From: Macrostomum lignano
Lineage: Eukaryota
Direction of reading: 5' to 3'
Length of the DNA: 46,400 nt
NCBI GenBank assembly: GCA_002269645.1
Contig: NIVC01004427.1
Coordinates: forward strand, 1-46,400
Shown here: piece by piece, positions 12,923-45,775 of the stretch
Numbering within the stretch: the stretch's first letter is position 1
Layout: each line of letters opens with the position of its first letter
The notes under the pieces: generated by a model
Told to the model about the DNA's origin: nothing
Databases searched by the model: none
What the model saw: the letters and a program-made list of their open reading frames with translations, nothing else
Position numbers and translations under genes: made by a program

Positions 12923-13470
12923 ATTATGATGGCCCACGAAAGGTTCAAACACGTTGGATTAAAAAATATTGACTCCACTAATTTGTTTGGCTTTGCTGGC
13001 TAGGAGTAACTTTGGAATGCGCAGGCTAAAGCAGTACCCTACTTGGATCGCTTCTAACTATAGATTTCTGGCCTCAATGCAGCTGAGAGCAACTAGAGAG
13101 GCTGGGAGAGAGAATTGCCGAACAGCTTTTTTGCCCATCTCGCTTGCTGATGGGAATTCGAAAAGCAACAGAAAACCTGTAAAGCCGAGGCCAGCGCAGA
13201 GTGGCAAAGAGATTGGTACGCGGAGGGTCGAGGTACTTCGTAGGATTTTCGGGAGGGGGGGGGCGGCAGTCTCCCACTGTATGAAGCAACTGTTTACCTG
13301 AACCTTGTAGACGCACAAAAAGGTTTTTTACGAAGCAGTGTAAAATGGGGACGAAAATAGGATAAAGTGAATCCAGCCAGTTTGTACAGTTGGTCCTCGT
13401 GTTTTAGGTTCAAATTTCCGCCACAGCAGAGACAGTTGAGTCAAAATCCATCCTCTAACCGAAATTCCAG

Positions 13471-14060
13471 TGGGCATCGTTCTCGCCTTCTTCATCTGCT
13501 ACGCTCCGTTTCACCTGTCCCGCATTCTGGCTGACGTGGTCTCCAAGGACGCCTACTGCCAGTCCTGCGTGGCCACGTGGGTCAACCAGAACCTGTTCCA
13601 CATCTCCGGCCTCCTGTTCTTCGGCTCGTCAATCGTGAACCCGATCCTCTACAACTTGATGTCGCTCAAGTTCCGCCGCGCATTCCGCAGCATCATGATG
13701 CGAGCGTGCCGACGGGGCCGCGGCAACCGGCACTGCGTCATCGTCTGCCATCGGGGCGGCGCCAGACGCTCCGCAGCCCGCCGAAGGGTAGAGATGGAGG
13801 CTGCAGCCGCTGGCGAGGGCCAAGCAATTCGACTGCAGCTCCGGGCGCCCGCGGAGGCCGGCGGCGCAGCCGTCAGTGGCAGCGGCGGAGGCGGCGGCAG
13901 CAGTTGCAGCGGCAAGGCCGCAGCCGCGGCCGGGGGAGCAGCAGCAGCAGCCGCAGCAGCCGCAGCGACTGGAGGCCACGGTTCAAGAAGTCTCTCGCGA
14001 AGCCGCAACTGCGAGGACCCGTTCGGAGCGCAGCGAATGTCGGCGGAAACCAAGCAGTGA
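13471..14060 (+). CDS. Neuropeptide GPCR exon 3 (TM6, TM7, helix 8, Ala/Gly-rich tail)
   Basis: Acceptor TTCCAG|TG completes a Val codon; FFICYAPFH and SSIVNPILYNLMSLKFRRAF; stop TGA at 14058-14060. Confidence 0.92.
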
Positions 14061-14387
14061 TCGTCTGCGTTGATTCGACTATTCCGCAAAGCTATGGCTT
14101 AACGCAAAAACTTCAACGCCACTGCCCTGCTGTCAAGCTCGTTAAATTGTGTCTACTATAAAATAGCATTGTTTAAACTCGAAGTTCGCGCGCTGTCGGC
14201 TCACAGAAAAATATAGAAAATACTATTCTGTAAGTCTTGTCTTGCCTCTCGCTTTTTCTCGCCGTGACTCGTGGCACTCTCCAAGCCACTCTAACCTGAC
14301 GGCTGCAACTCTTAGGGCCCTGTTATCGCAGTTAGGCATGAAGCTACTCAAGCTGCAACCTCCCGACCTTTGTAACCCGGCGAGCAT

Positions 14388-20300: not shown

Positions 20301-22339
20301 TTTGAGGAGGTGCATCGTGAGTCGTGAGTCGGCAGTTCACTAGGATGATGTTTGAGGAGCTGCATCGTGAGTCGTGAGTCGGCAGTTCACTAGGATGATG
20401 TTTGAGGAGCTGCATCGTGAGTCGTGAGTCGGCAGTTCACTAGGATGATGTTTGAGGAGCTGCATCGTGAGTCGTGAGTCGGCAGTTCACTAGGATGATG
20501 TTTGAGGAGCTGCATCGTGAGTCGTGAGTCGGCAGTTCACTAGGATGATGTTTGAGGAGCTGCATCGTGAGTCGTGAGTCGGCAGTTCACTAGGATGATG
20601 TTTGAGGAGCTGCATCGTGAGTCGTGAGTCGGCAGTTCACTAGGATGATGTTTGAGGAGCTGCATCGTGAGTCGTGAGTCGGCAGTTCACTAGGATGATG
20701 TTTGAGGAGCTGCATCGTGAGTCGTGAGTCGGCAGTTCACTAGGATGATGTTTGAGGAGCTGCATCGTGAGTCGTGAGTCGGCAGTTCACTAGGATGATG
20801 TTTGAGGAGCTGCATCGTGAGTCGTGAGTCGGCAGTTCACTAGGATGATGTTTGAGGAGCTGCATCGTGAGTCGTGAGTCGGCAGTTCACTAGGATGATG
20901 TTTGAGGAGCTGCATCGTGAGTCGTGAGTCGGCAGTTCACTAGGATGATGTTTGAGGAGCTGCATCGTGAGTCGTGAGTCGGCAGTTCACTAGGATGATG
21001 TTTGAGGAGCTGCATCGTGAGTCGTGAGTCGGCAGTTCACTAGGATGATGTTTGAGGAGCTGCATCGTGAGTCGTGAGTCGGCAGTTCACTAGGATGATG
21101 TTTGAGGAGCTGCATCGTGAGTCGTGAGTCGGCAGTTCACTAGGATGATGTTTGAGGAGCTGCATCGTGAGTCGTGAGTCGGCAGTTCACTAGGATGATG
21201 TTTGAGGAGCTGCATCGTGAGTCGTGAGTCGGCAGTTCACTAGGATGATGTTTGAGGAGCTGCATCGTGAGTCGTGAGTCGGCAGTTCACTAGGATGATG
21301 TTTGAGGAGCTGCATCGTGAGTCGTGAGTCGGCAGTTCACTAGGATGATGTTTGAGGAGCTGCATCGTGAGTCGTGAGTCGGCAGTTCACTAGGATGATG
21401 TTTGAGGAGCTGCATCGTGAGTCGTGAGTCGGCAGTTCACTAGGATGATGTTTGAGGAGCTGCATCGTGAGTCGTGAGTCGGCAGTTCACTAGGATGATG
21501 TTTGAGGAGCTGCATCGTGAGTCGTGAGTCGGCAGTTCACTAGGATGATGTTTGAGGAGCTGCATCGTGAGTCGTGAGTCGGCAGTTCACTAGGATGATG
21601 TTTGAGGAGCTGCATCGTGAGTCGTGAGTCGGCAGTTCACTAGGATGATGTTTGAGGAGCTGCATCGTGAGTCGTGAGTCGGCAGTTCACTAGGATGATG
21701 TTTGAGGAGCTGCATCGTGAGTCGTGAGTCGGCAGTTCACTAGGATGATGTTTGAGGAGCTGCATCGTGAGTCGTGAGTCGGCAGTTCACTAGGATGATG
21801 TTTGAGGAGCTGCATCGTGAGTCGTGAGTCGGCAGTTCACTAGGATGATGTTTGAGGAGCTGCATCGTGAGTCGTGAGTCGGCAGTTCACTAGGATGATG
21901 TTTGAGGAGCTGCATCGTGAGTCGTGAGTCGGCAGTTCACTAGGATGATGTTTGAGGAGCTGCATCGTGAGTCGTGAGTCGGCAGTTCACTAGGATGATG
22001 TTTGAGGAGCTGCATCGTGAGTCGTGAGTCGGCAGTTCACTAGGATGATGTTTGAGGAGCTGCATCGTGAGTCGTGAGTCGGCAGTTCACTAGGATGATG
22101 TTTGAGGAGCTGCATCGTGAGTCGTGAGTCGGCAGTTCACTAGGATGATGTTTGAGGAGCTGCATCGTGAGTCGTGAGTCGGCAGTTCACTAGGATGATG
22201 TTTGAGGAGCTGCATCGTGAGTCGTGAGTCGGCAGTTCACTAGGATGATGTTTGAGGAGCTGCATCGTGAGTCGTGAGTCGGCAGTTCACTAGGATGATG
22301 TTTGAGGAGCTGCATCGTGAGTCGTGAGTCGGCAGTTCA
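14388..22339. repeat. Satellite array, 50-bp unit GTTTGAGGAGCTGCATCGTGAGTCGTGAGTCGGCAGTTCACTAGGATGAT, ~159 copies
   Basis: Near-perfect head-to-tail repeats with no unique spacers; one 1-bp deletion near 17054 shifts the phase. Confidence 0.98.
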
Positions 22340-31166: not shown

Positions 31167-31304
31167 TCAACCGCTGACAATGCGCTGCTGGTGCGACAGC
31201 ACCTCGTAATCCGGCACTGCCAGGCTGAACTCCAGGCCGAGCAGGGCCGCCATCTCCTGGGAGAGAATCTCCCGTCTAGACAGTCGGAAGGCGCTCTCCA
31301 GCTC
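31167..31304 (-). CDS. CABLES: CABLES exon 12 (last), end of cyclin-like domain
   Basis: ELESAFRLSRREILSQEMAALLGLEFSLAVPDYEVLSHQQRIVSG* parallels the CABLES C-terminus (LEEKFRLNRRELI..LEFAL..P..EV..H..R); acceptor CCAAG|. Confidence 0.9.
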   Translation of the reverse strand, partial: ELESAFRLSRREILSQEMAALLGLEFSLAVPDYEVLSHQQRIVSG

Positions 31305-31613
31305 CTTGGAGGGGGGGGAATGAATGGCATGCGCTGCATTTGCATTTCAGAATTGAGACTCGTGCGCATCGGAGGGGGGAAGATAAACGACGGGAAAGCG
31401 GGCAAACAGATCGATAATTATGGATTCGGTATGGGGGAGTTAGATGGGGGAGATAGATAGATAGATAGATAGATAGACGTTTGAAAAAACCTCTCACGCA
31501 GTGGCAGCTCTAACCAAGGTAAGTGAGAAATAAATAAGATAGTCACAAAGGTAAAAAAATATAAGAATTATGGTAAACCGATATTTCGGCCGTGAAATGG
31601 CCTTCGTCAGGGT

Positions 31614-32204
<591 letters not shown>

Positions 32205-32296
32205 TTGCTTGCCGCAGCCAATCAAGCTGAATGCACGCACACAAGATCACCGGAAACGATTAAGGCAGCTGGAAAGCCAATGGGCGCGAGAAAGCC

Positions 32297-32731
<435 letters not shown>

Positions 32732-32749
32732 AGCAATGTCCGCACTGAC

Positions 32750-32854
32750 CTGCAGCAACACAGTGAGGTCGGGCCCTTTGATGTCGTTGAGCTTGGCAGA
32801 GAGCACCAGAGACACGGCGCACGAGTGCCGCCTGTTGAGCTTGTTAACAAAGCC
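32750..32854 (-). CDS. CABLES: CABLES exon 11
   Basis: [35 protein letters not shown] (cf. GKLNKQNRKLCAGACVLLAAK); GCGCAG| acceptor, CAG|GTCAGT donor, 35 codons. Confidence 0.9.
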
Positions 32855-32947
32855 CTGCGCAGCATAAAGGATGGCCAGACGAGAAGTCAATCAATATTCG
32901 CAGGTGAAGCGGAAAATCGGGAGAAAATTACAATTTGAAAAGCGCAC

Positions 32948-33010
32948 CTTTAACGCCAGCTTATCAAAAAATACATATGCCTGAGCTACCGCCCAGGTGT
33001 CCAGGCCGGC
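32948..33010 (-). CDS. CABLES: CABLES exon 10
   Basis: AGLDTWAVAQAYVFFDKLALK (cf. TVAMAFVYFEKLALK); TTTCAG| acceptor, AAG|GTGCGC donor. Confidence 0.88.
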
Positions 33011-33063
33011 CTGAAAGGCGAGTGATGATAGAGAGTAAATGAGGGAGGGAGAGGGAGTGAGGG

Positions 33064-33308
33064 AGAGAGAGTAAGGTAGGAGGTTGAGAGAGTAAGGTAG
33101 GAGGGTGAAAGAGTGAGGTAGGAGGGTGAGAGAGTGAGGTAGGAGGGTGAGAGAGTGAGATAGGAGGGTGAGAGAGTAAGGTAGGAGGGTGAAAGAGTGA
33201 GGTAGGAGGGTGAGAGAGTAAGGTAGGAGGGTGAGAGAGTGAGGTAGGAGGGTGAAAGAGTGAGGTAGGAGGGTGAGAGAGTAAGGTAGGAGGGTGAGAG
33301 AGTGAGGT
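33064..33308. repeat. Purine-rich 21-bp minisatellite GAGAGT(G/A)AGGTAGGAGGGTGA, ~11 copies, CABLES intron 9
   Basis: Direct periodicity. Confidence 0.93.
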
Positions 33309-33597
33309 AAATGCCAAGCCCAGTACGCAGGCAGACAGGGTCAATGCTAAGACAGCCAGTGCCATATGAGGCACTGTGCCGCATCTGGAGTGCCAACATT
33401 AGGGTCTGTTCAAGTCAGCGCGCGCTATCAGAAGAGAAGGCTGGAGAACACTCGTAACAGATATCTGAAGAGTCTAGAGGGACGCATCTGACAGGTGGGA
33501 AAATTTTAATTGCTAAGGAATTCAAAGAAATCGAATCCGCGACCTCTAGGCGACAAAGCAAAGTACACAGGGCACTGTAGTAGCCCTAGACTCAGAC

Positions 33598-33738
33598 CTT
33601 CCTGCTGACGCGAAGAGCCACCGCCTTCAGACTGCGCAATTTGCTCAGCGTGAGCTGCACCTGAGGAAATCTGTCCCTAAATTGCTGGTTCAGGTCGCGC
33701 TTTAAATCGCTTGGCCGAACGTAGCTCAGCAAAGAGGT
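33598..33738 (-). CDS. CABLES: CABLES exon 9
   Basis: TSLLSYVRPSDLKRDLNQQFRDRFPQVQLTLSKLRSLK (cf. [34 protein letters not shown]), the most diagnostic CABLES block. Confidence 0.95.
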
Positions 33739-33927
33739 CTGCGGAGGCGAAGGGGCGTTGTGTGGCGCTTCGATCAATGTACATCACAGGGCTGCTCAGC
33801 TGGCAAATCTTTCTAATTACAGTGCTCTGATCGCCGCGAGTAATTAAGGCGCGAGTTATTCCCATACAGGAAGCAGAATAGAGTACGTGTAGAACTTACA
33901 ACTCATGCTGTCATGCATGATCCCAAA

Positions 33928-34490
33928 CCCACACACAAATTATAACCCACACCCACACTCACACTATACCCAAAGCCATACTAGATGTAACTCCCACACC
34001 ATACAAATACCACACCCACATACTAAATCCCACACTCACACACTAAATCCCACACCCTACCCTAAATCCCACACCCACACACTAAATCCCACACCCACAC
34101 ACTAAACCCCACACCCTACCCTAAATCCAACACTACACCAAATCCCACACCCTACCCTAAATCCCACACTCAGAAACTAAATCCCACACTCACATACTAA
34201 ATCCCACACTCACACTAAATCCCACACCCATACTAAATTTACCACACACTAAATCCCACACCCTACCCTGAATCCAACACCCTACACTAAATCCCACACC
34301 CTACCCTAAATCACACACCAACACACTAAATCCCACACCCTACCCTAAATCCCACACTCACATACTAAATCCCACACTCACACTAAATCCCACACCCATA
34401 CTAAATTTACCACATACTAAATCCCACACTCACACACTAAATCACATACCCTACCCTAAATCCAATACCCATACACTAAATCCCACAATG
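33928..34490. repeat. Degenerate TAAATCCCACAC(CC/TC)-type repeat, CABLES intron 8
   Basis: Recurring CTAAATCCCACAC motif at roughly 18-24-bp spacing. Confidence 0.85.
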
Positions 34491-34530
34491 CCACACTGGC
34501 ATGGCAACAAGAACCAGTCTAGCCACTAAC

Positions 34531-34634
34531 CCTGAACGATGAGAAGTTGAGCACAGTCCTGTGCTTGCCGCAGACCAGCTCAGGATTGTCCAACAGATGC
34601 GGATGATAAGCCACCAGCGGTGCGGACTCGGAAA
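34531..34634 (-). CDS. CABLES: CABLES exon 8
   Basis: AYHPHLLDNPELVCGKHRTVLNFSSF (cf. YDPNLLDDPQWPCGKHKRVLIFPSY); TAACAG| acceptor, AGG|GTTAGT donor. Confidence 0.92.
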
Positions 34635-35027
34635 CTGTTAGGGAATGGGCGAAAATGATTGTCTGCAATCGAGTGTAAGCCAGATTAGCAACCCTTAGTA
34701 AGCTTTAAGTTAATCGGGGCAAACTTAGCACAGCAAACAAAGGCTAATTGTAAACATCAGAATGAAATTATTTGTGAAAAAAATCTAATAGAAAAAAGAA
34801 TAAACATTCGATGAAAACTTCGAGAGAAAGTAATCTTGAGAAACAAATGTTTAAAATAAAATTGAATACAGGCAGTTGAAAATAAATAATAATAAACTTA
34901 TATTTACAATAAAGTACATTTGTCGATACTGTTTGCTAATTGAAAATCTTACACGCATCGAGTTGGTGATACCGCCTCATGCTGCTCCTGTGCGAGCCTG
35001 ATTGAATAGTTTTGTGTAAAGTTTAGC

Positions 35028-35330
35028 AGTGAGTGTACACAGGCACCCGGCTGTAAGTGTACACAGCACTCAGCTGTCAGGCTCTCAGCTGTGAGTGTAC
35101 ACAGGCACCCGGCTGTAAGTGTACACAGCACTCAGCTGTCAGGCTCTCAGCTGTGAGTGTACACAGGCACCCGGCTGTAAGTGTACACAGCACGCAGCTG
35201 TGAGTGTACACAGGCACTCAGCTGTCAGGCTCTCAGCTGTCAGGCTCTCAGCTGTCAGGCTCTCAGCTGTCAGGCTCTCAGCTGTCAGGCTCTCAGCTGT
35301 TAGTCTCTCAGCTGTGAGTGTACACAGGCA
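35028..35330. repeat. Compound repeat (~62-bp unit x2.5, then 15-bp CTCAGCTGTCAGGCT x5), CABLES intron 7
   Basis: Direct repeats visible in the sequence. Confidence 0.88.
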
Positions 35331-35404
35331 CTGTACATGTAGAGTCAACGTCAATGTACATTCCATAAGCTATTCATGAAGTCTAGTAGAGTCGAACTGC
35401 TCAC

Positions 35405-35618
35405 CAGAGGCCAATACAGCGGAACCATTTGCCTGCCCGGAGACAGCAGCCAGTTGGCTGTATTCGTCTGCAGATACGAACCGCTTGTAGGGCGTCAGGC
35501 CCCCGCTGATGCCGCTGCCGCTGCCGCTGCCGCTGCCGCCACTGCTGACGGACAGCTGGCCGTCTAGGTAGCGACGTCGCAGCGCAGAAGGTTGCAGCAG
35601 ATGGGCGTAGGAGACGTA
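35405..35618 (-). CDS. CABLES: CABLES exon 7
   Basis: YVSYAHLLQPS (conserved VSY..LL.P motif), then a Ser/Gly tract; CACAG| acceptor, TCTG|GTGAGC donor, phase 1. Confidence 0.85.
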
Positions 35619-35685
35619 CTGTGGGATACAGCGTGTTTTTGATGCTGCTAGGGAATTCGAGCTGAAGACTGCGGTGGCGGTGGCT

Positions 35686-35864
35686 CAGCAATTGAGGATC
35701 TGGGAGGCTGGCCCAGCAACTGAGGGATTTGGGAGGCTGGCCTAGCAACTGAGGGTCTGGGAGGCTGACCTAGCAACTGAGGATCTGGGAGGCTGGCCTA
35801 GCAACTGAGGATCTGGGAGGCTGGCCTAGCAACTGAGGATCTGGGAGGCTGGCCCAGCAACTGA
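35686..35864. repeat. 28-bp minisatellite AGCAACTGAGGATCTGGGAGGCTGGCC(T/C), ~6 copies, CABLES intron 6
   Basis: Direct periodicity. Confidence 0.9.
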
Positions 35865-35910
35865 GTACAACTCTAAGAACAGCAGGAGTCTCCTGAGCAC
35901 AATGGCAGAC

Positions 35911-36037
35911 CTGTCCCTCATCCAGACGCAGCTGGAAGGTGGGCAGCGAGGCGGTCAGGTCCAGTGTTGGCGAGGTGCTGCCGCTCAGCTGCTGCTGGCT
36001 CTGCCGCACTGCATCGGAGGCGGAGGCCGCGTCGCTT
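35911..36037 (-). CDS. CABLES: CABLES exon 6
   Basis: SDAASASDAVRQ..LRLDEGQ; TTTTAG| acceptor, CAG|GTCTGC donor; phases match both neighbours. Confidence 0.8.
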
Positions 36038-36422
36038 CTAAAAGAAGTTAGAAACAGAAAAACTTCAATATGAATTGGGCATAAGAAACGTAGGCTCTTT
36101 TTAGGACAATTTTTAGAATTCTGCGCCTTGGTCAAAGGAAAAGAAGAGTCGATACAAAAACAAAGGTGCTTGGCCCGCGTCTAAATTTATCGGTGACGTT
36201 AATGCTCAACAGCTGTCGCCTCTCACGCGCAGTCCCTAATCATTGTGCTGTCCGTTTGAGCATGCCAAAGAATAATTATCACCCCAATCTGTGACGATAA
36301 TTCTCAAAAAGACGGCTTTAAAAAAATAAATTAACTTCCTAAATAGTTTTAGACTCAGAGCTGCTTGCTTTTACTGCAGAAGGATTTGTCCGCGAACTTT
36401 TGACACAAACCTCGTAGTTTAG

Positions 36423-36542
36423 ACTAACTAACTAACTGACTAACTAACTAACTAACTAACTAACTGACTAACTAACTGGCTGACTGACTAACTAACTAAC
36501 TGACTAACTAACTAACTAACTAACTAACTGACTAACTAACTG

Positions 36543-36581
<39 letters not shown>

Positions 36582-36582
36582 G

Positions 36583-36629
<47 letters not shown>

Positions 36630-36734
36630 GACTAACTAACTAACTAACTGACTAACTAACTAACTGACTAACTAACTAACTAACTAACTAACTGACTAAC
36701 TAACTAACTAACTGACTAACTAACTAACTAACTG

Positions 36735-36777
<43 letters not shown>

Positions 36778-36778
36778 G

Positions 36779-36820
<42 letters not shown>

Positions 36821-36821
36821 C

Positions 36822-36879
<58 letters not shown>

Positions 36880-36890
36880 TTGACTAACTG

Positions 36891-36937
<47 letters not shown>

Positions 36938-36938
36938 G

Positions 36939-36989
<51 letters not shown>

Positions 36990-36990
36990 G

Positions 36991-37047
<57 letters not shown>

Positions 37048-37058
37048 TTGACTAACTG

Positions 37059-37101
<43 letters not shown>

Positions 37102-37102
37102 G

Positions 37103-37161
<59 letters not shown>

Positions 37162-37162
37162 G

Positions 37163-37251
<89 letters not shown>
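36423..37251. repeat. (TAAC)n microsatellite with TGAC variants, ~830 bp, CABLES intron 5
   Basis: Tetranucleotide periodicity. Confidence 0.96.
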
Positions 37252-37252
<1 letters not shown>

Positions 37253-37311
37253 CAAGTAGTTAGGTCAGGCATCAAACTACCTGTCCCCTCAGCAACAAAC
37301 CCAAACCCTAC

Positions 37312-37392
37312 CTGTTAGCAGTGGTCTCCCTGCAATACTTGACCACCGAGAATACGCAGAAAGGTGCTTGACAGCCGGCGGCGAGAATCCAG
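37312..37392 (-). CDS. CABLES: CABLES exon 5
   Basis: (R)WILAAGCQAPFCVFSVVKY (cf. RIVLIS..SFCSIFSVLPY); TTTTCAG| acceptor, AG|GTAGGG donor. Confidence 0.85.
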
Positions 37393-37487
37393 CTGAAAAA
37401 TTATTTGTAAAACTTAATCAACAATTTCTCATTGACTTGGATTGACAATAAAGTACATTTGGAACCTTTCGAAATCGCAGACCTTAC

Positions 37488-37644
37488 CGTTCAGCCTGAG
37501 GGCGCTCCTTCCTCCCGGCCGAGCAGCAGTGATAGAAGGCTCTGGGCGGTGGCGAGCACTGCGGGAACGGGGCGGACGGCTGCTGCAGAGGCGGCAGCGG
37601 CTGTTGCTGGGCAGACGAACCCGATTTCTGGCGCTGTCTGCCAA
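37488..37644 (-). CDS. CABLES: CABLES exon 4
   Basis: GRQRQKSGSSAQQQ..RKERPQAE; donor ACG|GTAAGG. The frame is fixed by exon 5; the exact acceptor among tandem AGs is less certain. Confidence 0.72.
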
Positions 37645-37852
37645 CTGCCAGCGGTGGGGATGGCGGGGAGGGAGAATTGAAATTAATTATACATGTGCTT
37701 GATCTAGTAACTGGAGCCCCTAAATAAAAGTCATTGATGGGAAGAGTCATTGGTTCATTGATGCATGGTTAACTGTATCACTAAGTCACGAAGCCTTGGG
37801 CCACAATGTTACTGAGTAAGCGGTGGTTGCGTCATCACGAAATTTGGCCTTT

Positions 37853-38470
37853 GTGTCATTGGTCATTGGATTATGGAATCATTGGATCATAGGGTTATTG
37901 GGTCATAGGATAATTGGATCATTGGATCATGGGGTCATGGGTCATTGGTTCATGGGGTCATTGATTCATTGGGTCATTTGGTGATGGAATCATTGGGTCA
38001 TAGGGTTATTGGGTCATAGGATCATTGGATCATTGGATCATGGGTCATTGGGTCATTGGTTCATGGGGTCATTGATTCATTGGGTCATTTGGTCATGGAA
38101 TCATTGAGTCACAGGGTGATTGGGTCATTGGGTCATTGAGTAATTGAGTCATTTGGTCATGGAATCATTGAGTCACAGGGTGATTGGATCATTGGGTCAT
38201 TGAGTAATTGAGTCATTTGGTCATGGAATCATTGAGTAACAGGTTGATTGGATCATTGGGTCATTGAGTCCTTGGATCATTTGGTTATGGAATCATTGAG
38301 TCACGGGGTGATTGAATTATTGGGTCATTGAGTAATTGAGTCATTTGGTCATGGAAACATTGAGTCACAGGTTAATTGGATCATGGGTTGATGGGGTTAT
38401 CGGTCATCAACTCAAATCAGTGATCGGGTCATTCGAACTATTGAGTCAACAAGTGATTGGGTCATAAAGT
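37853..38470. repeat. Degenerate (GGTCATT/GGATCATT/GAGTCATT)n repeat with higher-order duplications, CABLES intron 3
   Basis: Recurring 7-9-bp motif, with 60-80-bp block duplications. Confidence 0.85.
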
Positions 38471-39046
38471 TAGGGCTCATCAGTAAATTGAATGAGTCAT
38501 GCATATAAGCCATGGAGCTATTTGGTCATTGAACCGGTCAAATTTTCAACAGTCAATTCTCTTACACTTGAATAGAATTTACATATTGAATTGTACTAGC
38601 AATCCAGCCCTCACATGTGAAAAGTTCACCAGAAATTTCATTCACACCAAAAGTTGAAAAAGTAATGACAAAACCATCGCTAAAAAGTAAATGTTGACAG
38701 AAAAATGATTGACAAATATTAAACTTTTTGTTTGCAAAATTTTACAACAAAAAGCAATACATAAAAGCATGGAAAAAACTGTTTTCAATTTCTCGAAGGA
38801 AAACAACGGATTGAAAAAGTAATGTTGTTGACGCTGAATCAACTCTGATTGTTATGCAGGAACTGGTAAAACAGATTTCCAAGATTTTATTTACATTAAA
38901 CTCGATACTCACCTTACAGGCTAGAAGGTAAGAGATTGTCTACGTTTCAGACGGGTTTTCGACTATTTTTTATAAACAACATCTACGGCAAACTATAAAT
39001 TCAAATGGTTAACGAAAACGAAAGTATTATGATAGCAGCGTAATTA

Positions 39047-39449
39047 TCATGTGACAGCTGTGTGACAATCATGTGACAGCTGTGTGACAATCATGTGACA
39101 GCTGTGTGACAATCATGTGACAGCTGTGTGACAATCATGAGACAACTGCGTGACAATCATGTGACAGCTGTGTGACAATCATGTGACAACTGCGTGACAA
39201 TCATGTGACAGCTGCGTGACAATCATGTGACAGCTGTGTGACAATCATGTGACAGCTGTGTGACAATCATGTGACAGCTGTGTGACAATCATGTGACAAC
39301 TGCGTGACAATCATGTGACAGCTGTGTGACAATCATGTGACAGCTGTGTGACAATCATGTGACAGCTGTGTGACAATCATGTGACAACTGCGTGACAATC
39401 ATGTGACAGCTGTGTGACAATCATGTGACAGCTGTGTGACAATCATGAC
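39047..39449. repeat. 22-bp minisatellite ATCATGTGACAGCTGTGTGACA, ~18 copies, CABLES intron 3
   Basis: Direct periodicity. Confidence 0.95.
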
Positions 39450-39572
39450 AACCTTGCTTCAACTAGCCGGAATTATAAATTTTAGACCTAGTAAAAGGAA
39501 ACTACAAAGGCTAAAATCAATCATCAGAAAGATGACATACAATTAGTTTCTGACAATGCGCATTGAACTCAC

Positions 39573-39637
39573 AGATGCCTTCGAAACCGCGACTCGACCG
39601 GGTTCTTGTCCGTCTGCGACTCGCCAGGCCTGTTTGA
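39573..39637 (-). CDS. CABLES: CABLES exon 3 (65-nt small exon)
   Basis: TTTGCAG| acceptor and TCT|GTGAGT donor; phases 2 and 1 reconcile exons 2 and 4. No homology support, and all three frames are open. Confidence 0.62.
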
Positions 39638-39925: not shown

Positions 39926-40350
39926 CTGGCAGCCAGCCCGTCCTCCGGAACGGCGACTTCCGAGCGGCAGGAGATGGCCGACAGCTGCAGCATCAGCCCG
40001 GAGCTGGGCGCCTCCGCAGCCGTCGCAGCCGCCACATCCTCTATAGCCAGCACGGAGCTCCGATTCGACGAAGAGGCTCCGGACCGCTGCCGACTACGAG
40101 ACGTCACTGCGAATCCGGGCACGTCGCCGCCGCCAAGCTCCGGCACGCTGAGAAGGGGGACAGTCAGCACCGCGGGCGGCGGCAGTGGGGGCGGCAGGGA
40201 CGACGCGTGACCGACGAACGCGGGCGCAGTCGGAGGGGCGGCTGACGCCGAATCGACTGAAAACGACGAAGCGACAGACATTCGGCAGGTTGCAGCGACG
40301 GCGGCGGCGGCGGCCGGGGCGGGCAGCGACCGCTCCCTGGTGGCGACGGG
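39926..40350 (-). CDS. CABLES: CABLES exon 2, low-complexity Ala/Pro/Ser region
   Basis: Open GC-rich frame between repeat blocks; acceptor TTCAAG| phase 0; donor CAG|GCGAGT (GC-AG). Both boundaries are inferred. Confidence 0.65.
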
Positions 40351-40402
40351 CTTGAAGGATAGTGCGATGGGATGGGCATGAAGACACAGAGAATTGCAGT
40401 GA

Positions 40403-40455
<53 letters not shown>

Positions 40456-40456
40456 A

Positions 40457-40553
<97 letters not shown>

Positions 40554-40813
40554 CTAAGACAGACAGACAGACAGACAGACACTAAGACAGACAGACAGAC
40601 AGACAGACACTAAGACAGACAGACAGACAGACAGACACTAAGACACTAAGACAGACAGACAGACAGACAGACAGACACTAAGACAGACAGACAGACAGAC
40701 AGACAGACACTAAGACAGACAGACAGACAGACAGACACTAAGACAGACAGACAGACAGACACTAAGACAGACAGACAGACAGACAGACAGACACTAAGAC
40801 AGACAGACATACG

Positions 40814-40849
<36 letters not shown>

Positions 40850-40884
40850 CTAAGACAGACAGACAGACAGACAGACAGACACTA

Positions 40885-40937
<53 letters not shown>

Positions 40938-40957
40938 CTAAGACAGACAGACATACG

Positions 40958-40993
<36 letters not shown>

Positions 40994-41028
40994 CTAAGAC
41001 AGACAGACAGACAGACAGACAGACACTA

Positions 41029-41061
<33 letters not shown>

Positions 41062-41081
41062 CTAAGACAGACAGACATACG

Positions 41082-41117
<36 letters not shown>

Positions 41118-41221
41118 CTAAGACAGACAGACAGACAGACAGACAGACACTAAGACAGACAGACAGACACTAAGACAGACAGACAGACAGACAGACAGAC
41201 ACTAAGACAGACAGACATACG

Positions 41222-41257
<36 letters not shown>

Positions 41258-41292
41258 CTAAGACAGACAGACAGACAGACAGACAGACACTA

Positions 41293-41327
<35 letters not shown>
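40403..41327. repeat. (GACA)n microsatellite with ~20 CACTAAG interruptions and four CATACGGACGGA markers, CABLES intron 1
   Basis: Tetranucleotide periodicity; markers at 40808, 40952, 41076 and 41216. Confidence 0.96.
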
Positions 41328-41335
41328 GCGGGCAC

Positions 41336-41626
41336 CTGAGCGGGCACCGCAGTGGAGCCGCCGTCCCCACCGAGAGCAGCGGCCTCATTGCCAGCCAAGT
41401 AGACGCCGTCCAACGAGATGTTGCTGAGGAAGTTCAGAGCCGCGATGCGTCTTCGGGCTTTTGACTTGGCCGCCGTTCGGCTCCGCTTCGAGGGGATCGG
41501 CAGAGCGTCGCCGAGATGCCGCCCGACGCCGACCGAACGGTCGGTAGAGGCGGCCTGCGCGGCGGCAGCCCAAACGGCGGCCGCTTCAACAGCGGGCGGC
41601 ACCTCCTTTGACGACGCCGGCTTCAG
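41336..41626 (-). CDS. CABLES: CABLES exon 1 (5'-most exon found; lacks ATG)
   Basis: RRRIAALNFLSNISLDG is the conserved CABLES N-terminal motif; donor CAG|GTGCCC. Join 41626-41336, 40350-39926, 39637-39573, 37644-37488, 37392-37312, 36037-35911, 35618-35405, 34634-34531, 33738-33598, 33010-32948, 32854-32750, 31304-31167 = 1911 nt (637 codons including stop). Confidence 0.85.
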
Positions 41627-41642
41627 CTGAAGTGAAAAGGGG
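41627..41642 (-). promoter_or_regulatory. Unpaired 3' splice acceptor CCCCTTTTCACTTCAG, candidate SL trans-splice site
   Basis: Pyrimidine tract plus CAG in phase 0 with CABLES; in-frame TGA at 41665-41663; no convincing upstream coding exon or donor before MCM9. Confidence 0.55.
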
Positions 41643-41667
41643 CCGGAGTTGGCGCTGATGCATCAGA

Positions 41668-42321
41668 GGATAGAGTGGGAGATGAGGAGATAGAGTGGGA
41701 GATGGGGGATAGAATGGGTGATGAGGGGATAGAGTGGGAGATGAGGGGATAGAATGCGAGATGAGGGGATAGAGTGGGAGATGAGGAGATAGAGTGGGAG
41801 ATGAGGAGATAGAGTGGGAGATGGGGGATGGAATGGGAGATGAGGGGATAGATCAGTGGGAGATGAGGGGATATGGGAGATGAGGGATAGAATGGGAGAT
41901 GAGGGGATAGAGTGGGAGATGGGGGATGGAATGGGAGATGAGGGGATAGATCACTGGGATATGAAGGGATAGAATGGGAGATGAGGGGATAGAATGGGAG
42001 ATGAGGGGATAGAATGGGAGATGAGGGGATAGAATGGGAGATGAGGGGATAGAATGGGAGATGAGGGGATAGAATGGGAGATGAGGGGATAGAATGGGAG
42101 ATGAGGGGATAGAGTGGGAGATGGGGGATGGAATGGGAGATGAGGGGATAGAATGGGAGATGAGGGGATAGAATGGGAGATGAGGGGATAGAATGGGAGA
42201 TGAGGGGATAGAATGGGAGATGAGGGGATAGAATGGGAGATGAGGGGATAGAATGGGAGATGAGGGGATAGAATGGGAGATGAGGGGATAGAATGGGAGA
42301 TGAGGGGATAGAATGGGAGAT
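41668..42321. repeat. 20-bp minisatellite GGGAGATGAGGGGATAGAAT, ~32 copies, between MCM9 and CABLES
   Basis: Direct periodicity; almost no C on +, hence almost no G on the transcribed strand. Confidence 0.95.
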
Positions 42322-42419
42322 ATATAGAAGGACACGAATTTAGCTGAGATAGGGTCAAATAAAAGGAAAGATTCTCGTTATAGAAAACAGCAAAGCAAAA
42401 AGGAGGAAGACCAATAAGC

Positions 42420-42425
42420 TTTATT
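42420..42425 (-). promoter_or_regulatory. Putative polyadenylation signal (AATAAA) of MCM9
   Basis: TTTATT on +, ~190 nt after the inferred stop, followed on the minus strand by a U-rich tract. Confidence 0.5.
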
Positions 42426-42617
42426 ACAACCGAAAGTTAAAAGTCCTGCTTTCAAAAGAAAGACAGAAATGAATTGCTTGAAATTAATTAGCTTCAAAAA
42501 AGCATGCAGAGCAAAACTGGGTGGCCCCGCTTTGAAGTAACAGTAAAAAGAGCGAAACACTGACTGAGATGGAAAACATATAAGTACATGTACTTATATC
42601 TATTGGGGAAAATGCAA

Positions 42618-44218
42618 CTACAAATCAAAATCTGACTCGTTGAGCAGTTCGTCGATGCTGAACAGTTGAGCCGCACTGGCCTCGGCGGGAGCATCTAAAG
42701 CGGATTTGGGGGCGGATTCGGGAGCGGATTTGGGGCGGATTCGGGAGCGGATTTGGGGGCGGATTCGGGAGCGGATTTAGGGGCGGATTTGGGGGCGGTT
42801 TTTCGCGGATCTTGGGAGCATTCAAAAGCCCTCAACTTGGCCATTGTGCCCTGAGCAAGCGGACGGCTTGAAAGACCACCGCCGCCGCCGCCTGCAGAAG
42901 CCGTTGACGAAGACGTCGTTGGCACAGCAGACAGCCGCTTGAACGCAAACCTCTGACTCGGCTGCTGACTATTGGTGATGGCGGCAGCTGGTGATGGCGG
43001 CGGCAGCATCGGAGCGCCTGAGAGCCTGCCAGAGTTCTCCGGCTGAGTCTGGTTGGTATCCATGGCAACGACAGCCGCTGTTTTTCCGCCGACGGCCTCC
43101 TTCGGCGTCTCCAGGTTGTCAATAATGTCGGGAATGTTAAAATCGTCAATGGAAAATATTGGACAAAACGCGTTGGAAGCCTTCAAACCGGAAGTGGCCG
43201 GACCGGAAGTGGCCGAACCGGAAGTACCCAGACCGGAAGTAGCCGGGCCGGAAGTAGCCCGACCGGAAGTGGCCGGAACGGAAGTGGCCGGAGGATTGAA
43301 AACTCGGTCGCTATTCTGCCCAGCCTGAAACCAGTCAGTCTGAATGTCGAACTGCAATGCGGCGCTAGACGCTGAAGAAATCGATTGAACGAGAGTATTG
43401 GCGACATTGTCAACTGCTAGCGACGACTTGGCGTTTTCCCATTTTCGCTTGTCGTTGTCCTCGTCATTGTTGTCGACGTCATCGACAATCGTGCGGCGAC
43501 GCTTTGCCGGCGAAGCCGACGATGCCGAGGAGGCCAGGCGCGACTTCTCGCCGGCGCGGAACTCTTGACGCGACAGCGCCAGAACCGGCCGACCGCCCGG
43601 CGGAGACAAATTTATCACCGACGCAGCATCGATAGCGTCACCGATCATAGTTCCAACTTCTCCGTCGACGGCGGACGCCAGCAGACGGTGCAGCCCGAGT
43701 GCGGCCAGCAGCTGGCGGGCCTCCTGAGCAAACTCGGCATCCGGCTGCTCCGGGAAGCCGGCTAGCGGCCCGACACCCACGCCGCCGCCTCTGCCATTTC
43801 CTGGAACCAGAGCGGCGCCGACCATGGAGGCTTCAACAACCGAGACGGCCATGAGCGCGTCCAGCAGGCTGACAGTCGGCCTGAGCATCAGCCTGGCGTG
43901 AGCTTCGGCCAGCCGGATGCAGCTCTCCAATAGGCGCGTGGTTGTCCGCGCGGCGCTACGATCGGCGCCAAGTTGATCCGGCGTCGTGGCCGCCCGCTGG
44001 CGCTGATAGTAAGCGGTCAGTACGGCGCCGGCCTCGGCTCCGATGGTCGGGTTGATGCTGCGAGCGTACGCAAAGTAGGCCTGCAGGCGCTCCAGGTTCC
44101 ACACTGGCTGCCGCCGCTGCTGCTGCTGGGGTTCACTCGCTGCCGGCGCCAATGTCGGCGCGTTCTCCTTGTCGTTGGCCGGCGACTCGTTCGAGTCCTC
44201 GGAATCTTCGGGTCGTCG
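42618..44218 (-). CDS. MCM9: MCM9 last exon (end of AAA+ region plus long disordered C-terminus); requires two 1-bp corrections
   Basis: WNLERLQAYFAYARSINP, YYQRQR and ARTTTRLLESCIRLAEAHARLM. Acceptor CTCCAG| at 44219. The frame continues to ..LFSIDELLNESDFDL* (TAG 42620-42618) if one base is restored in the G4 run at 42732-42735. Confidence 0.82.
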
Positions 44219-44378
44219 CTGGAGCGGTGAAATAAGAGAAGTTGAAGATTCCAAAATCTCAAACAGCTTTTCAATTTCTATCTAGTAGCGCAATAGCAAT
44301 CTCAAGTCCCCATCCCGTGTCTAATCCCAATCAACAACAATTATCCCAATCAAATCCCTATAAAAGAACGGGGCGCAC

Positions 44379-45027
44379 CGCTCGATAAGGGCCTTGAGCA
44401 CGTGCTCAGACACGGCGGCATCCCAGGCCGGGTCGCCCCTATCCAGCATGACCAGCACGAGGTCGAAGCGGCTGAGCAGCGGGCTGGCCAGGTTGGTGTT
44501 GACGCTGAGGCTCTGGCCGGTGTCCAGCTTGCCGTGCGGGTTGGTGGCGGCCAGCACGGAGCAGCGGGTGTTGAGCTTGCACACCAGGCCGGCCTTGGCC
44601 ACGGACAGGGTCTGCTGCTCCATGGCCTCGTGAATGCAGGTCCGGTCCCGCTCGCCAACGGAGTTGAACTCGTCAATGCAGCAGACTCCGCCGTCGGCCA
44701 GCACGAGAGCTCCGGCCTCCAGGGCCCACTGGCCGCCTTCGCGAACTGCGGCGGCGGTCAGGCCGGCGGCGCTGCTGCCGACTCCGGTGGTGAGCACCGA
44801 GCGGCTGGCGAGGCGGCTGGCAAAGCGCAGGAACTGCGACTTGCCGGTGCCCGGATCGCCAATTAGCAGCAGGTGCGGCTGGCCGCGGGTCCGGTGCCCG
44901 CTCTCGGTGGACTTCTGGACACCGCCGGCCAGGGTGAGGGCGACGGCCAGTTTGGCCAGACGGAGGCCGCACAGCTGCGGGCAGATGCCGGCCAGGATTC
45001 GATCCCGGGCCAGCAGCGGCTGGTCGC
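44379..45027 (-). CDS. MCM9: MCM9 AAA+ ATPase exon
   Basis: [21 protein letters not shown], Walker [37 protein letters not shown] (Walker B), [24 protein letters not shown], arginine finger SRFDL. The wording is MCM9-type rather than MCM2-7 or MCM8. Acceptor TACAG|, donor CG|GTGCGC. Confidence 0.95.
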
Positions 45028-45077
45028 CTGTAGTGGGGAAGGGGAAGTTAGGAACCACACGTAGTTGACAGGTATGC

Positions 45078-45775
45078 GAATTGTGACAGCAGGGAATTGT
45101 GACAGCAGGGAATTGTGACAGCAGGGAATTGTGACAGCAGGGAATTGTGACAGTAGGGAATTGTGACAGTAGGGAATTGGAGTGACAGCTTGGAGAATCA
45201 GAGCAGGTGACAGCAGGGGAATCAGAGCAGGTGACAGCAGGGGGAATCAAAGCAGGTGACCGCATGGGGAATCAGAGCAGGTGACATCATAGGGAATCAG
45301 AGCAGGTGACATCATGAGGAATCAGAGCAGGTGACATCATGGGGAATCAGAACAGGTGACAGCATGGGGAATCAGAGCAGGTGACAGCAGGGGGAATCAG
45401 AACAGGTGACAACAGGGGAATCAGAGCAGGTGACAGCAGGGGGAATCAGAGCAGGTGACAGCAGGGAAATCAGAACAGGTGACAACAGGGGGGAATCAGA
45501 GCAGGTGACAGCAGGGGGAATCAGAGCAGGTGACAGCAGGGAAATCAGAACAGGTGACAGCAGGGGGAATCAGAACAGGTGACAGCAGGGGAATCAGAGC
45601 AGGTGACAGCATGGGGAATCAGAGCAGGTGACCGCATGGGGAATCAGAGCAGGTGACAGCATGGGGAATCAGAGCAGGTGACCGCATGGGGAATCAGAGC
45701 AGGTGACAGCATGGGAATAAGAGCAGGTGACCGCATGGGAATCAGGCAGGTGACCGCATGGGGAATCAGAGCAGC
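45078..45775. repeat. Compound minisatellite: 16-bp AATTGTGACAG(C/T)AGGG x6, then ~25-bp GGGAATCAGAGCAGGTGACAGCA(T/G)G x~23, MCM9 intron
   Basis: Direct periodicity. Confidence 0.93.

What the first reader, a model, noticed from the sequence alone, without database searches (positions are those of the whole stretch)
41336..42620. Candidate MCM9-CABLES operon with an ATG-less downstream gene whose start codon would be donated by the spliced leader
Seen: CABLES exon 1 carries the conserved RRxAALxFLxNISLDG motif but no Met; the first in-frame ATG is in exon 2, downstream of that motif. An in-frame TGA lies at 41665-41663. A strong acceptor TTTTCACTTCAG sits exactly in phase 0 at 41627. The only things upstream are a 654-bp repeat, ~100 nt of U-rich sequence, and the co-oriented MCM9 AATAAA (42420) and stop (42618). 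Without the repeat, polyA signal to acceptor is ~140 nt. Established knowledge: flatworm spliced leaders end in AUG, which can act as the initiator, and SL trans-splicing resolves operons with short U-rich intercistronic gaps. Inference: SL-AUG + CTG AAG.. gives MLKPASSKEV.., a 637-aa CABLES whose translation depends on trans-splicing and which is co-transcribed with a DNA-repair helicase. The host identity is itself inferred.
Basis: partly seen in the sequence, partly recalled or inferred. Interest (0 to 1): 0.9.

Follow-up and report, generated by a model that had tools for sequence, protein, structure and literature searches.

The report
CABLES gene lacking own start codon
In the flatworm Macrostomum lignano the CABLES gene lies about 0.8 kb behind MCM9 and its first coding exon has no start codon, so it most likely borrows the AUG that ends the trans-spliced leader; this mechanism is already documented in flatworms, so it is a plausible new example that still lacks RNA proof.

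Summary
The sequence observation holds. The window is Macrostomum lignano. On the minus strand, CABLES exon 1 (41626-41336) encodes the conserved CABLES N-terminal box. It has no in-frame ATG in the 109 codons after an in-frame TGA (41665-41663). It is preceded by a consensus acceptor, ttttcacttcag|CTG, in phase 0. MCM9 lies upstream on the same strand. Its only AATAAA (42425-42420) is 793 nt from the acceptor, or 139 nt without a 654-bp minisatellite. That tract contains no usable ATG and only five AG dinucleotides.

The published M. lignano spliced leader ends in ATG. About 30% of its genes are trans-spliced and about 15% lie in operons. Repeat-adjusted spacing between trans-spliced neighbours peaks near 100 bp.

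No RNA evidence could be reached with these tools, so trans-splicing at 41627 and co-transcription with MCM9 remain inferences.

The mechanism is not new. More than 40 Schistosoma mRNAs are reported to need the leader AUG, and Macrostomum operons with repeat-inflated spacers are described.

One correction: as assembled, MCM9 stops at 42697-42695.

Verdict: a probable new member of a known kind, of modest interest.

The parts
44324..45271 (-). Open frame containing the MCM9 exon that encodes the AAA+ P-loop domain
   Evidence: Pfam MCM P-loop domain, E 3e-75. Best solved-structure match is human MCM9 at 295 bits, against 212 for the next MCM.
42695..44281 (-). MCM9 last exon (AAA-lid domain and a long low-complexity tail), up to the stop codon as assembled (TAG 42697-42695)
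   Evidence: Pfam MCM_lid, E 1e-16. Frame and stop read.
42618..42802 (-).
   Evidence: Tandem Repeats Finder. Three-frame translation shows the +1 shift.
42420..42425 (-). MCM9 poly(A) signal AATAAA, the only one between the MCM9 stop and CABLES
42322..42419 (-). 98-nt U-rich unique spacer (48% T, 71% pyrimidine)
41668..42321 (-). 654-bp minisatellite (CCTCATCTCCCATTCTATCC)n. On the sense strand it has no ATG, 4 G and a single AG.
41661..41665 (-). TGATG: the in-frame stop TGA (41665-41663) overlapping the out-of-frame ATG (41663-41661)
41627..41642 (-). Candidate trans-splice acceptor ccccttttcacttcag. It matches [T/C]TNCAG and leaves the next base (41626) in phase 0.
   Evidence: Motif from PMC8629364.
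41336..41626 (-). CABLES exon 1: 97 codons, no ATG, donor CAG|gtgccc
   Evidence: 100% identical to UniRef A0A1I8FUA0.
41405..41455 (-). Conserved CABLES N-terminal box RRRIAALNFLSNISLDG
   Evidence: Alignment with 11 orthologues gives 10 invariant columns. 78% identity over 23 residues to an oyster CABLES1-like protein.
40351..41335 (-). Intron 1, almost entirely a (CTGT)n microsatellite
39926..40350 (-). CABLES exon 2. It holds the first in-frame ATG of the gene (40281-40279). Its 3' end is uncertain (39926, 39922 or 39914).
31167..39637 (-). CABLES exons 3-12 (39637-39573, 37644-37488, 37392-37312, 36037-35911, 35618-35405, 34634-34531, 33738-33598, 33010-32948, 32854-32750, 31304-31167) with the cyclin box. 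Stop is TGA 31169-31167.
   Evidence: Spliced model with canonical sites and no frameshift, supported by a related-species transcript contig L001. Pfam Cyclin_N, weak and below the curated cut-off.

Best explanation
This is the 3' end of the Macrostomum lignano MCM9 gene followed, on the same strand, by a CABLES gene whose mRNA 5' end is made by spliced-leader trans-splicing.

Proposed mechanism:
1. The spliceosome joins the 35-nt leader (...UUAUUGCAUG) to the acceptor that ends at 41627.
2. This discards the upstream pyrimidine-rich tract together with its out-of-frame AUG.
3. The last three bases of the leader then sit directly in front of CUG AAG CCG, so translation starts at the leader's AUG.
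4. The product is MLKPASSKEV..., a CABLES protein of about 637 aa with its conserved N-terminal box at residues 59-75.

The pre-mRNA most likely begins at the MCM9 promoter, giving a two-gene operon. Cleavage and polyadenylation after AATAAA (42425-42420) and trans-splicing 793 nt downstream would then separate the two messages. The 654-bp minisatellite is a neutral insertion into an original spacer of about 140 nt.

Shown here: the anatomy, the gene identities, the phase, and the absence of any alternative in-frame start. Taken from the literature: the leader sequence and the existence of operons. Inferred: use of this acceptor, initiation at the leader AUG, and co-transcription with MCM9.
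For: **Coding status of exon 1**
- It carries all 10 invariant residues of the CABLES N-terminal box, and every orthologue starts upstream of the box.
- The reading frame has no ATG from the upstream TGA to the donor.

**Upstream tract**
- Between AATAAA and the acceptor, the only sense-strand ATG is the out-of-frame one at 41663.
- The five other ATGs upstream lie before the poly(A) signal and have no GTRAG donor.
- Of the five AG dinucleotides in those 793 nt, only the one ending at 41627 both matches the published trans-splice motif and yields an open frame.
- Acceptors this strong occur about once per 5.8 kb on this strand.

**Integrity of the CDS**
- The rest of the CDS is intact over 12 exons, which argues against a decayed copy.

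**Literature**
- PMC8629364: the M. lignano leader ends in ATG; 30% of all genes and 45% of genes with a human homologue are trans-spliced; 15% lie in operons; repeat-adjusted distance between trans-spliced neighbours peaks near 100 bp; repeats are said to inflate operon spacers.
- PMC9851317, citing Cheng et al. 2006: more than 40 Schistosoma mansoni cDNAs need the leader AUG.
- PMC10468722: the ATG in Macrostomum leaders is noted as a likely start codon.
Against: - No RNA-level evidence was obtained.
- Five paper supplements mention neither gene.
- Only fragmentary gene models from the older ML2 assembly exist in the protein collection.
- The assembly shows possible 1-nt homopolymer differences nearby. 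One is the 11-nt unit in the MCM9 12-mer repeat. The other is GGGG here against an apparent GGG in the ML2 model P0001. The C4/T4 run at 41642-41635 could therefore be one base too long.
- Most trans-spliced M. lignano genes are not in operons (PMC8629364), so the operon part rests on distance alone.
- MCM9-CABLES adjacency is absent in the one non-flatworm genome checked, the annelid Dimorphilus.
Confidence: 0.45

Rival explanations
1. CABLES is trans-spliced at 41627 and uses the leader AUG, but it has its own promoter in or near the roughly 0.8-kb spacer. Under this reading it is a monocistronic trans-spliced gene, not part of an operon with MCM9.
For: - About 60% of trans-spliced M. lignano genes are not assigned to operons (PMC8629364).
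- Nothing here demonstrates read-through past the MCM9 poly(A) signal.
- The adjacency is not conserved in the annelid Dimorphilus.
Against: - Only 98 nt of unique, U-rich sequence plus a simple minisatellite lie between the poly(A) signal and the acceptor region.
- The repeat-adjusted distance of 139 nt falls at the published operon peak near 100 bp, not in the second mode of the distribution, which lies beyond the 1-kb cut-off.
Confidence: 0.25
2. The gene has an ordinary start codon, the ATG at 41663. The window carries one base too many in the CCCC/TTTT run (41642-41635), through assembly error or a variant in this copy. The true N-terminus would be MHQRQLRPFSLQLKPASS...
For: - An ATG sits 37 nt upstream of 41626, one base out of frame.
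- Two other possible 1-nt homopolymer differences occur within 1.2 kb.
Against: - All 12 CABLES exons (1.9 kb) join in frame without any correction, so indel errors in this stretch are not frequent.
- This reading leaves the phase-0 consensus acceptor with an 11/12 pyrimidine tract as a coincidence, expected about 0.01 times (and my arithmetic).
- The 5' UTR would have to start inside a minisatellite or be read through from MCM9.
- If the acceptor is used at all, this ATG is removed from the mRNA anyway.
Confidence: 0.1
3. Exon 1 is spliced in cis to an unrecognised upstream exon that carries the ATG. That exon would lie inside or beyond MCM9.
For: The acceptor at 41627 could in principle serve cis-splicing. 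The window ends inside MCM9, so sequence further upstream was not seen.
Against: - There is no ATG with a phase-compatible consensus donor anywhere between the MCM9 stop region and the acceptor.
- An exon further upstream would have to lie within or beyond a co-oriented gene of more than 4 kb.
- In orthologues the box is within 8-45 residues of the Met.
Confidence: 0.05
4. The N-terminal box is not translated from an AUG in this copy. Either translation starts at the exon-2 Met (40281) or at a near-cognate codon such as CUG 41626 or GUG 41602, or this is a decaying duplicate in a neopolyploid genome.
For: - M. lignano carries several CABLES copies, seen as multiple divergent ML2 models.
- The neighbouring MCM9 copy has a frameshift in its tail as assembled.
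- In-frame near-cognate codons exist in exon 1.
Against: - The 97-codon exon is open and its box is intact at all invariant positions.
- The whole CDS is intact.
- Without trans-splicing, the out-of-frame AUG at 41663 would precede any near-cognate start.
Confidence: 0.08

Closest known systems
Schistosoma mansoni mRNAs that require the spliced leader's 3'-terminal AUG as initiator (Cheng, Cohen, Ndegwa & Davis 2006, J Biol Chem 281:733; seen only as summarised in PMC9851317 and PMC12582326)
   Same: - The flatworm leader ends in AUG.
- The acceptor is in phase with an ORF that has no AUG of its own upstream of conserved coding sequence.
- The leader therefore supplies the initiator Met.
   Different: - The species is different: a free-living macrostomorph, not a trematode.
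- The case here is inferred from genomic sequence only, whereas the schistosome cases rest on cDNAs and translation assays.
Macrostomum lignano operons as defined by Ustyantsev & Berezikov 2021 (PMC8629364)
   Same: - The genes are adjacent and co-oriented.
- The acceptor motif is [T/C]TNCAG.
- The repeat-adjusted spacer of 139 nt is near the published peak of about 100 bp.
- A tandem repeat inflates the raw distance, exactly as that paper describes.
   Different: - The defining requirement, leader-containing reads at the downstream gene, could not be checked.
- That paper does not, in its text, name this gene pair or discuss leader-donated start codons.
slORFs: open reading frames created by spliced-leader addition (slORFfinder, PMC9851317)
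   Same: The ORF exists only on the trans-spliced mRNA, with its start codon contributed by the leader.
   Different: - slORFs in that study were called from RNA-seq plus ribosome footprints in nematodes, trypanosomes and Oikopleura, often from non-AUG codons.
- Here the start is a true AUG, the ORF is the canonical conserved protein, and there are no footprint data.
Caenorhabditis elegans SL2-type operons (my own knowledge, and as summarised in PMC8629364)
   Same: - A short U-rich intercistronic region of about 100 nt lies between the upstream poly(A) signal and the downstream trans-splice site.
- Most operons contain two genes.
   Different: - M. lignano has a single leader with no specialised SL2.
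- The nematode leaders do not end in AUG.
- The spacer here carries a 654-bp minisatellite.

Membership tests
mRNA whose initiator AUG is donated by the flatworm spliced leader | The organism has a spliced leader that ends in AUG | tested here: met
   The organism was identified as M. lignano. The published leader is CGGTCTCTTACTGCGAAGACTCAATTTATTGCATG (PMC8629364). The feature rests on the literature; no leader gene lies in the window.
mRNA whose initiator AUG is donated by the flatworm spliced leader | The acceptor is in phase, so the leader AUG reads straight into the conserved ORF | tested here: met
   CAG|CTG AAG CCG falls on a codon boundary. The frame is open to the donor and through all 12 exons.
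mRNA whose initiator AUG is donated by the flatworm spliced leader | No genomic in-frame AUG lies between the upstream in-frame stop and conserved coding sequence | tested here: met
   109 codons from TGA 41665 to the donor hold no ATG. The conserved box lies at codons 58-74 of the exon.
mRNA whose initiator AUG is donated by the flatworm spliced leader | The leader sequence is observed joined to this acceptor in RNA | not testable with these tools
   No M. lignano transcript data were reachable. Supplements of five papers have no entry for the gene.
mRNA whose initiator AUG is donated by the flatworm spliced leader | Translation actually starts at the leader AUG | not testable with these tools
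   This needs ribosome profiling, N-terminal proteomics or a reporter assay.
M. lignano operon (operational definition of PMC8629364) | The genes are immediately adjacent and co-oriented, with nothing on the opposite strand between them | tested here: met
   MCM9 and CABLES are both on the minus strand. The spacer holds only a minisatellite and 139 nt of unique sequence, and Rfam finds nothing there.
M. lignano operon (operational definition of PMC8629364) | Repeat-adjusted intergenic distance is below 1 kb | tested here: met
   793 nt from the poly(A) signal to the acceptor, or 139 nt after subtracting the 654-bp array.
M. lignano operon (operational definition of PMC8629364) | The downstream gene is shown to be trans-spliced, or a polycistronic precursor is detected | not testable with these tools
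   Same limitation as above: no RNA data were reachable.
CABLES (CDK5 and ABL1 enzyme substrate) family | C-terminal cyclin-box region homologous to named CABLES proteins | tested here: met
   471 hits, the best of which are named CDK5 and ABL1 enzyme substrate 1 or 2. 40% identity over 260 aa to an oyster CABLES1-like protein, E 8e-62. Pfam Cyclin_N scores 20.7 bits, below the 23-bit cut-off.
CABLES (CDK5 and ABL1 enzyme substrate) family | N-terminal RRRxAAxxFLxNISLDG box | tested here: met
   Ten invariant columns across 12 sequences.
MCM9 | The AAA+ MCM domain is closer to MCM9 than to MCM2-8 | tested here: met
   Human MCM9 chains score 295 and 292 bits, the next MCM 212 bits, and MCM8 165 bits. 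Pfam finds MCM and MCM_lid. The N-terminal part of the gene lies outside the window.

The most novel reading that the evidence does not exclude
CABLES protein synthesis in Macrostomum may be obligatorily gated by trans-splicing. Only the leader can give the message a start codon, and the competing out-of-frame AUG at 41663 is removed in the same step. The AG-poor, 81%-pyrimidine spacer of about 790 nt, including the minisatellite, might then act as a length-variable element that tunes how efficiently the downstream cistron of an MCM9-CABLES operon is resolved. That would couple a DNA-repair helicase and a CDK regulator in proliferating neoblasts.
Probability: 0.07. Interest if true: 0.55.

Novelty: new member of a known kind. 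Interest (0 to 1): 0.3.

Why it matters
If confirmed, this would be a clean example, in a genetically tractable flatworm, of a conserved regulatory gene that cannot be translated unless its mRNA is trans-spliced. M. lignano has transgenesis, so the dependence could be tested directly with reporters.

It also has a practical side. Gene models that trim the leader, or that demand a genomic ATG, will truncate such proteins or mark them as fragments. The only public models found for this exon are Met-less fragments. Annotation pipelines for flatworms should therefore allow the leader's ATG.

It does not change current understanding of trans-splicing, because the mechanism and this operon architecture are already published.

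Tried and rejected
**Searches for RNA or independent DNA evidence**
- An exact-protein look-up of the ML2 fragment P0001 found nothing on record.
- A scan of metagenome contigs with the first 27 nt of exon 1 gave no match.
- A HMMER search of 1.84 billion representative proteins with the exon-1 peptide gave no hits at E <= 0.001. The box alone is too short to score, and no leader-initiated product surfaced.
- Supplements of five M. lignano papers contain neither CABLES nor MCM9.

**Related-species transcript**
- A Logan contig from run SRR28338165 (76% identical protein) covers only the middle and 3' part of the gene. It helped fix exon 4 but says nothing about the 5' end.

**Synteny**
- The Paragonimus heterotremus CABLES locus has a 3.7-kb run of N where an N-terminal exon might lie and only 2.5 kb upstream, so it is uninformative.
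- An apparent N-box hit that I first attributed to Paragonimus belonged to the annelid Dimorphilus locus. There the gene has a normal ATG and no MCM neighbour.

**Readings rejected**
- The repeat as coding sequence, promoter or RNA gene: no ATG, no Rfam match, and it is one of about 20 ordinary tandem arrays that fill 44% of the window.
- A leader RNA gene in the window: none found.

**Left unresolved**
- The exact 3' end of exon 2 (three variants, 636-641 aa) cannot be resolved without RNA. It does not affect the 5' end.
Full report
**Identity of the window**

The exon-1 peptide is 100% identical to a UniRef entry from Macrostomum lignano. All close protein hits are fragmentary M. lignano models from the older ML2 assembly. 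It is a free-living macrostomorph. The window is very rich in tandem repeats: about 20 arrays cover roughly 20.3 of 46.4 kb.

**Check of the observation**

All statements below refer to the minus strand.
- The reading frame runs ...L*CISANSGPFSLQ|LKPASSKEV...KARRRIAALNFLSNISLDGVYLAGNE...AVPAQ|gtgccc.
- The in-frame TGA is at 41665-41663, and the donor follows 41336.
- There is no Met in the 109 codons in between.
- The acceptor ccccttttcacttcag ends at 41627, and the next base starts a codon.
- An ATG at 41663-41661 overlaps the TGA and is one base out of frame. It opens a short out-of-frame ORF of about 25 codons.
- The 20-mer array occupies 41668-42321 with 32.8 copies.
- AATAAA at 42425-42420 is the only poly(A) signal in the interval.
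- From the end of the signal to the acceptor is 793 nt, or 139 nt without the array.
- The first in-frame ATG of the gene is in exon 2, at 40281-40279.

One point needs correcting. As assembled, the MCM9 frame ends at TAG 42697-42695.

**Gene identities**

The upstream ORFs carry the MCM P-loop and AAA-lid domains. They match human MCM9 structures at 295 bits, against 212 bits for the next MCM and 165 bits for MCM8.

For the downstream gene:
- A query made of the exon-1 box plus the C-terminal exons returned 471 hits. The best named ones are 'CDK5 and ABL1 enzyme substrate 1/2'.
- I assembled a 12-exon coding sequence (41626 to stop 31169-31167) in which every junction but one is GT-AG and no frame correction is needed.
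- Three variants differ only at the end of exon 2 and the start of exon 4, giving 636, 637 or 641 aa. The 637-aa variant uses a GC donor at the end of exon 2.
- The model aligns with an oyster CABLES1-like protein at 40% identity over 260 residues (E 8e-62), and again over the N-terminal box.
- A transcript contig from a related species (run SRR28338165, 76% identity) supports the middle exons.

**Is exon 1 coding?**

Yes. I aligned it with the N-termini of 11 CABLES proteins from molluscs, arthropods, unidentified Logan and JGI transcript contigs, and vertebrates. The box RRRxAAxxFLxNISLDG is invariant at ten positions. In every orthologue the initiator Met lies 8-45 residues upstream of the box. 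In M. lignano the box starts at codon 58 of exon 1. A start codon is therefore required upstream of 41455, and the genome does not provide one in frame.

**What lies upstream**
- Between the poly(A) signal and the acceptor, the sense strand is 81% pyrimidine (370 C, 274 T, 126 A, 23 G).
- It contains a single ATG, the out-of-frame one at 41663.
- The other sense ATGs (42694-42505) lie before the poly(A) signal, in the MCM9 tail or 3' UTR. None has a phase-compatible GTRAG donor.
- The same 793 nt hold only five AG dinucleotides.
- Three of them (42374, 42344, 41954) would put the leader AUG in the frame that runs into the TGA at 41665.
- One (41655) gives the out-of-frame short ORF and does not match the motif.
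- Only the AG ending at 41627 matches [T/C]TNCAG, has 11 of 12 upstream pyrimidines, and opens the CABLES frame.
- Acceptors of that quality occur 8 times in 46.4 kb on this strand. By my arithmetic, about 0.01 would be expected by chance in phase 0 within the roughly 70 codons between the stop and the box.

**What the literature adds**
- The M. lignano leader is the 35-nt CGGTCTCTTACTGCGAAGACTCAATTTATTGCATG (PMC8629364).
- 30% of its genes, and 45% of genes with a human homologue, are trans-spliced. 15% are assigned to operons, mostly of two genes.
- The enriched motif at trans-splice acceptors is [T/C]TNCAG.
- Once repeats are subtracted, the distance between trans-spliced neighbours peaks near 100 bp. 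The authors state that repeats have inflated operon spacers.
- Wudarski et al. report that about 7% of assembled transcripts are polycistronic precursors (PMC5730564).
- The 3'-terminal AUG is a general feature of flatworm leaders and can initiate translation. More than 40 S. mansoni cDNAs are reported to require it (Cheng et al. 2006, as summarised in PMC9851317, and PMC12582326).

**Best explanation**

The CABLES mRNA most likely begins with the leader joined at 41626, and the leader's AUG starts the protein (MLKPASSKEV...). I put that component at about 0.7.

The pair also fits the sequence-based criteria for an M. lignano operon. The genes are co-oriented, nothing lies between them, and the repeat-adjusted spacer is 139 nt. 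The criterion that matters, RNA evidence, is missing, and most trans-spliced genes in this species are not in operons. I put the full statement (leader AUG plus operon with MCM9) at 0.45, and the 'trans-spliced but own promoter' variant at 0.25.

**Rivals**
  - Two possible 1-nt differences nearby keep this alive. One is the 11-nt repeat unit in MCM9. The other is GGGG here against an apparent GGG in ML2 model P0001.
  - Against it: 1.9 kb of CABLES coding sequence needs no correction. The rival would also leave the phase-0 consensus acceptor unexplained.
  - If the acceptor is used, that ATG is spliced away in any case. I give this rival 0.1.
- *Hidden upstream cis exon.* No candidate lies in the spacer, and it would otherwise have to sit inside or beyond MCM9. 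I give it 0.05.
- *Exon-2 Met, near-cognate start, or decaying duplicate.* This conflicts with the intact, conserved box and the intact CDS. I give it 0.08.

**Comparison with what is known, and novelty**

The proposed mechanism matches that of the schistosome mRNAs that depend on the leader AUG. The architecture matches the M. lignano operons already described, including the repeat-inflated spacer.

The sequence-level defining features of both classes were tested and met. The RNA-level and translation-level features could not be tested. I therefore file this as a probable new member of a known kind.

I found no paper that names this gene pair or lists leader-dependent start codons for M. lignano. 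The gene-level observation may be unreported, but the principle is not new.

MCM9-CABLES adjacency is not seen in the annelid Dimorphilus, where CABLES has its own ATG. The only flatworm locus I could fetch, from Paragonimus, is uninformative because of an assembly gap.

**Verdict**

Interest is modest (0.3), because the finding is a well-argued instance of published biology rather than a new mechanism. It is decidable in an afternoon with existing M. lignano RNA-seq.

Noticed in passing
window 42699-42802 (minus strand): The MCM9 C-terminal tail contains a 12-nt coding repeat (..APKSAPES..) in which one unit has 11 nt (CCCC instead of CCCCC, near 42735). As assembled this shifts the frame and stops MCM9 at 42697-42695, 26 codons before the natural-looking end ...FSIDELLNESDFDL* at 42620-42618. 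It is either a homopolymer assembly error or a real frameshift in this copy.
   Followed up: partly
window ~41372 (minus strand), compared with protein P0001: The ML2-assembly model A0A1I8FUA0 reads ...AALGGTAAPLRCPLR|ERSLP where the window encodes ...AALGGDGGSTAVPAQ|PVATRERSLP. This fits a GGG/GGGG length difference compensated by a different exon-2 acceptor. The window version splices with canonical phase 0.
   Followed up: partly
window 14384-22339: An 8-kb satellite of a 50-bp unit (159 copies, 99% identical) with strong GC skew (about 0.39). It is the largest of about 20 tandem arrays that together fill about 44% of the window.
   Followed up: no
window 5243-7273 (plus strand): A retrotransposon pol fragment with zinc knuckle, aspartyl protease, RT-RNase H and integrase domains. 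It looks like an LTR-type element and the reading frames are broken into pieces.
   Followed up: no
window 9687-10262 and 13440-14057 (plus strand): Two exons of a rhodopsin-family G-protein-coupled receptor (Pfam 7tm_1, N-terminal and C-terminal halves). They are separated by about 3 kb that includes a 31-mer tandem array.
   Followed up: no
window 40403-41327, 36423-37252, 31614-32731 (CABLES introns): Several CABLES introns consist almost entirely of tetranucleotide microsatellites of 0.8-1.1 kb: (ACAG)n, (ACTA)n and (TAGA)n as written on the plus strand. Intron 1 is (CTGT)n on the sense strand, starting right after the donor.
   Followed up: no
proteins P0001-P0008, P0023, P0050 (UniRef, M. 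lignano ML2 models): The public ML2 models of the CABLES copies are Met-less, frame-shifted fragments. They carry unrelated automatic names (OAR, PHM7_cyt, SPATA6, DUF4476, DUF3591, Mab-21, myotubularin). At least three sequence-distinct copies of the gene seem to exist.
   Followed up: partly
window 39926-39573 and 37644-37637 (minus strand): The exon 2 / exon 3 / exon 4 junctions are ambiguous. A GC donor (CAG|gcgagt), a weak GT donor (GGA|gtttgg) or a phase-0 donor (CGA|gtttcg) each give an open frame, paired with one of two AGs 7 nt apart at exon 4. The related-species transcript favours the upstream AG.
   Followed up: partly
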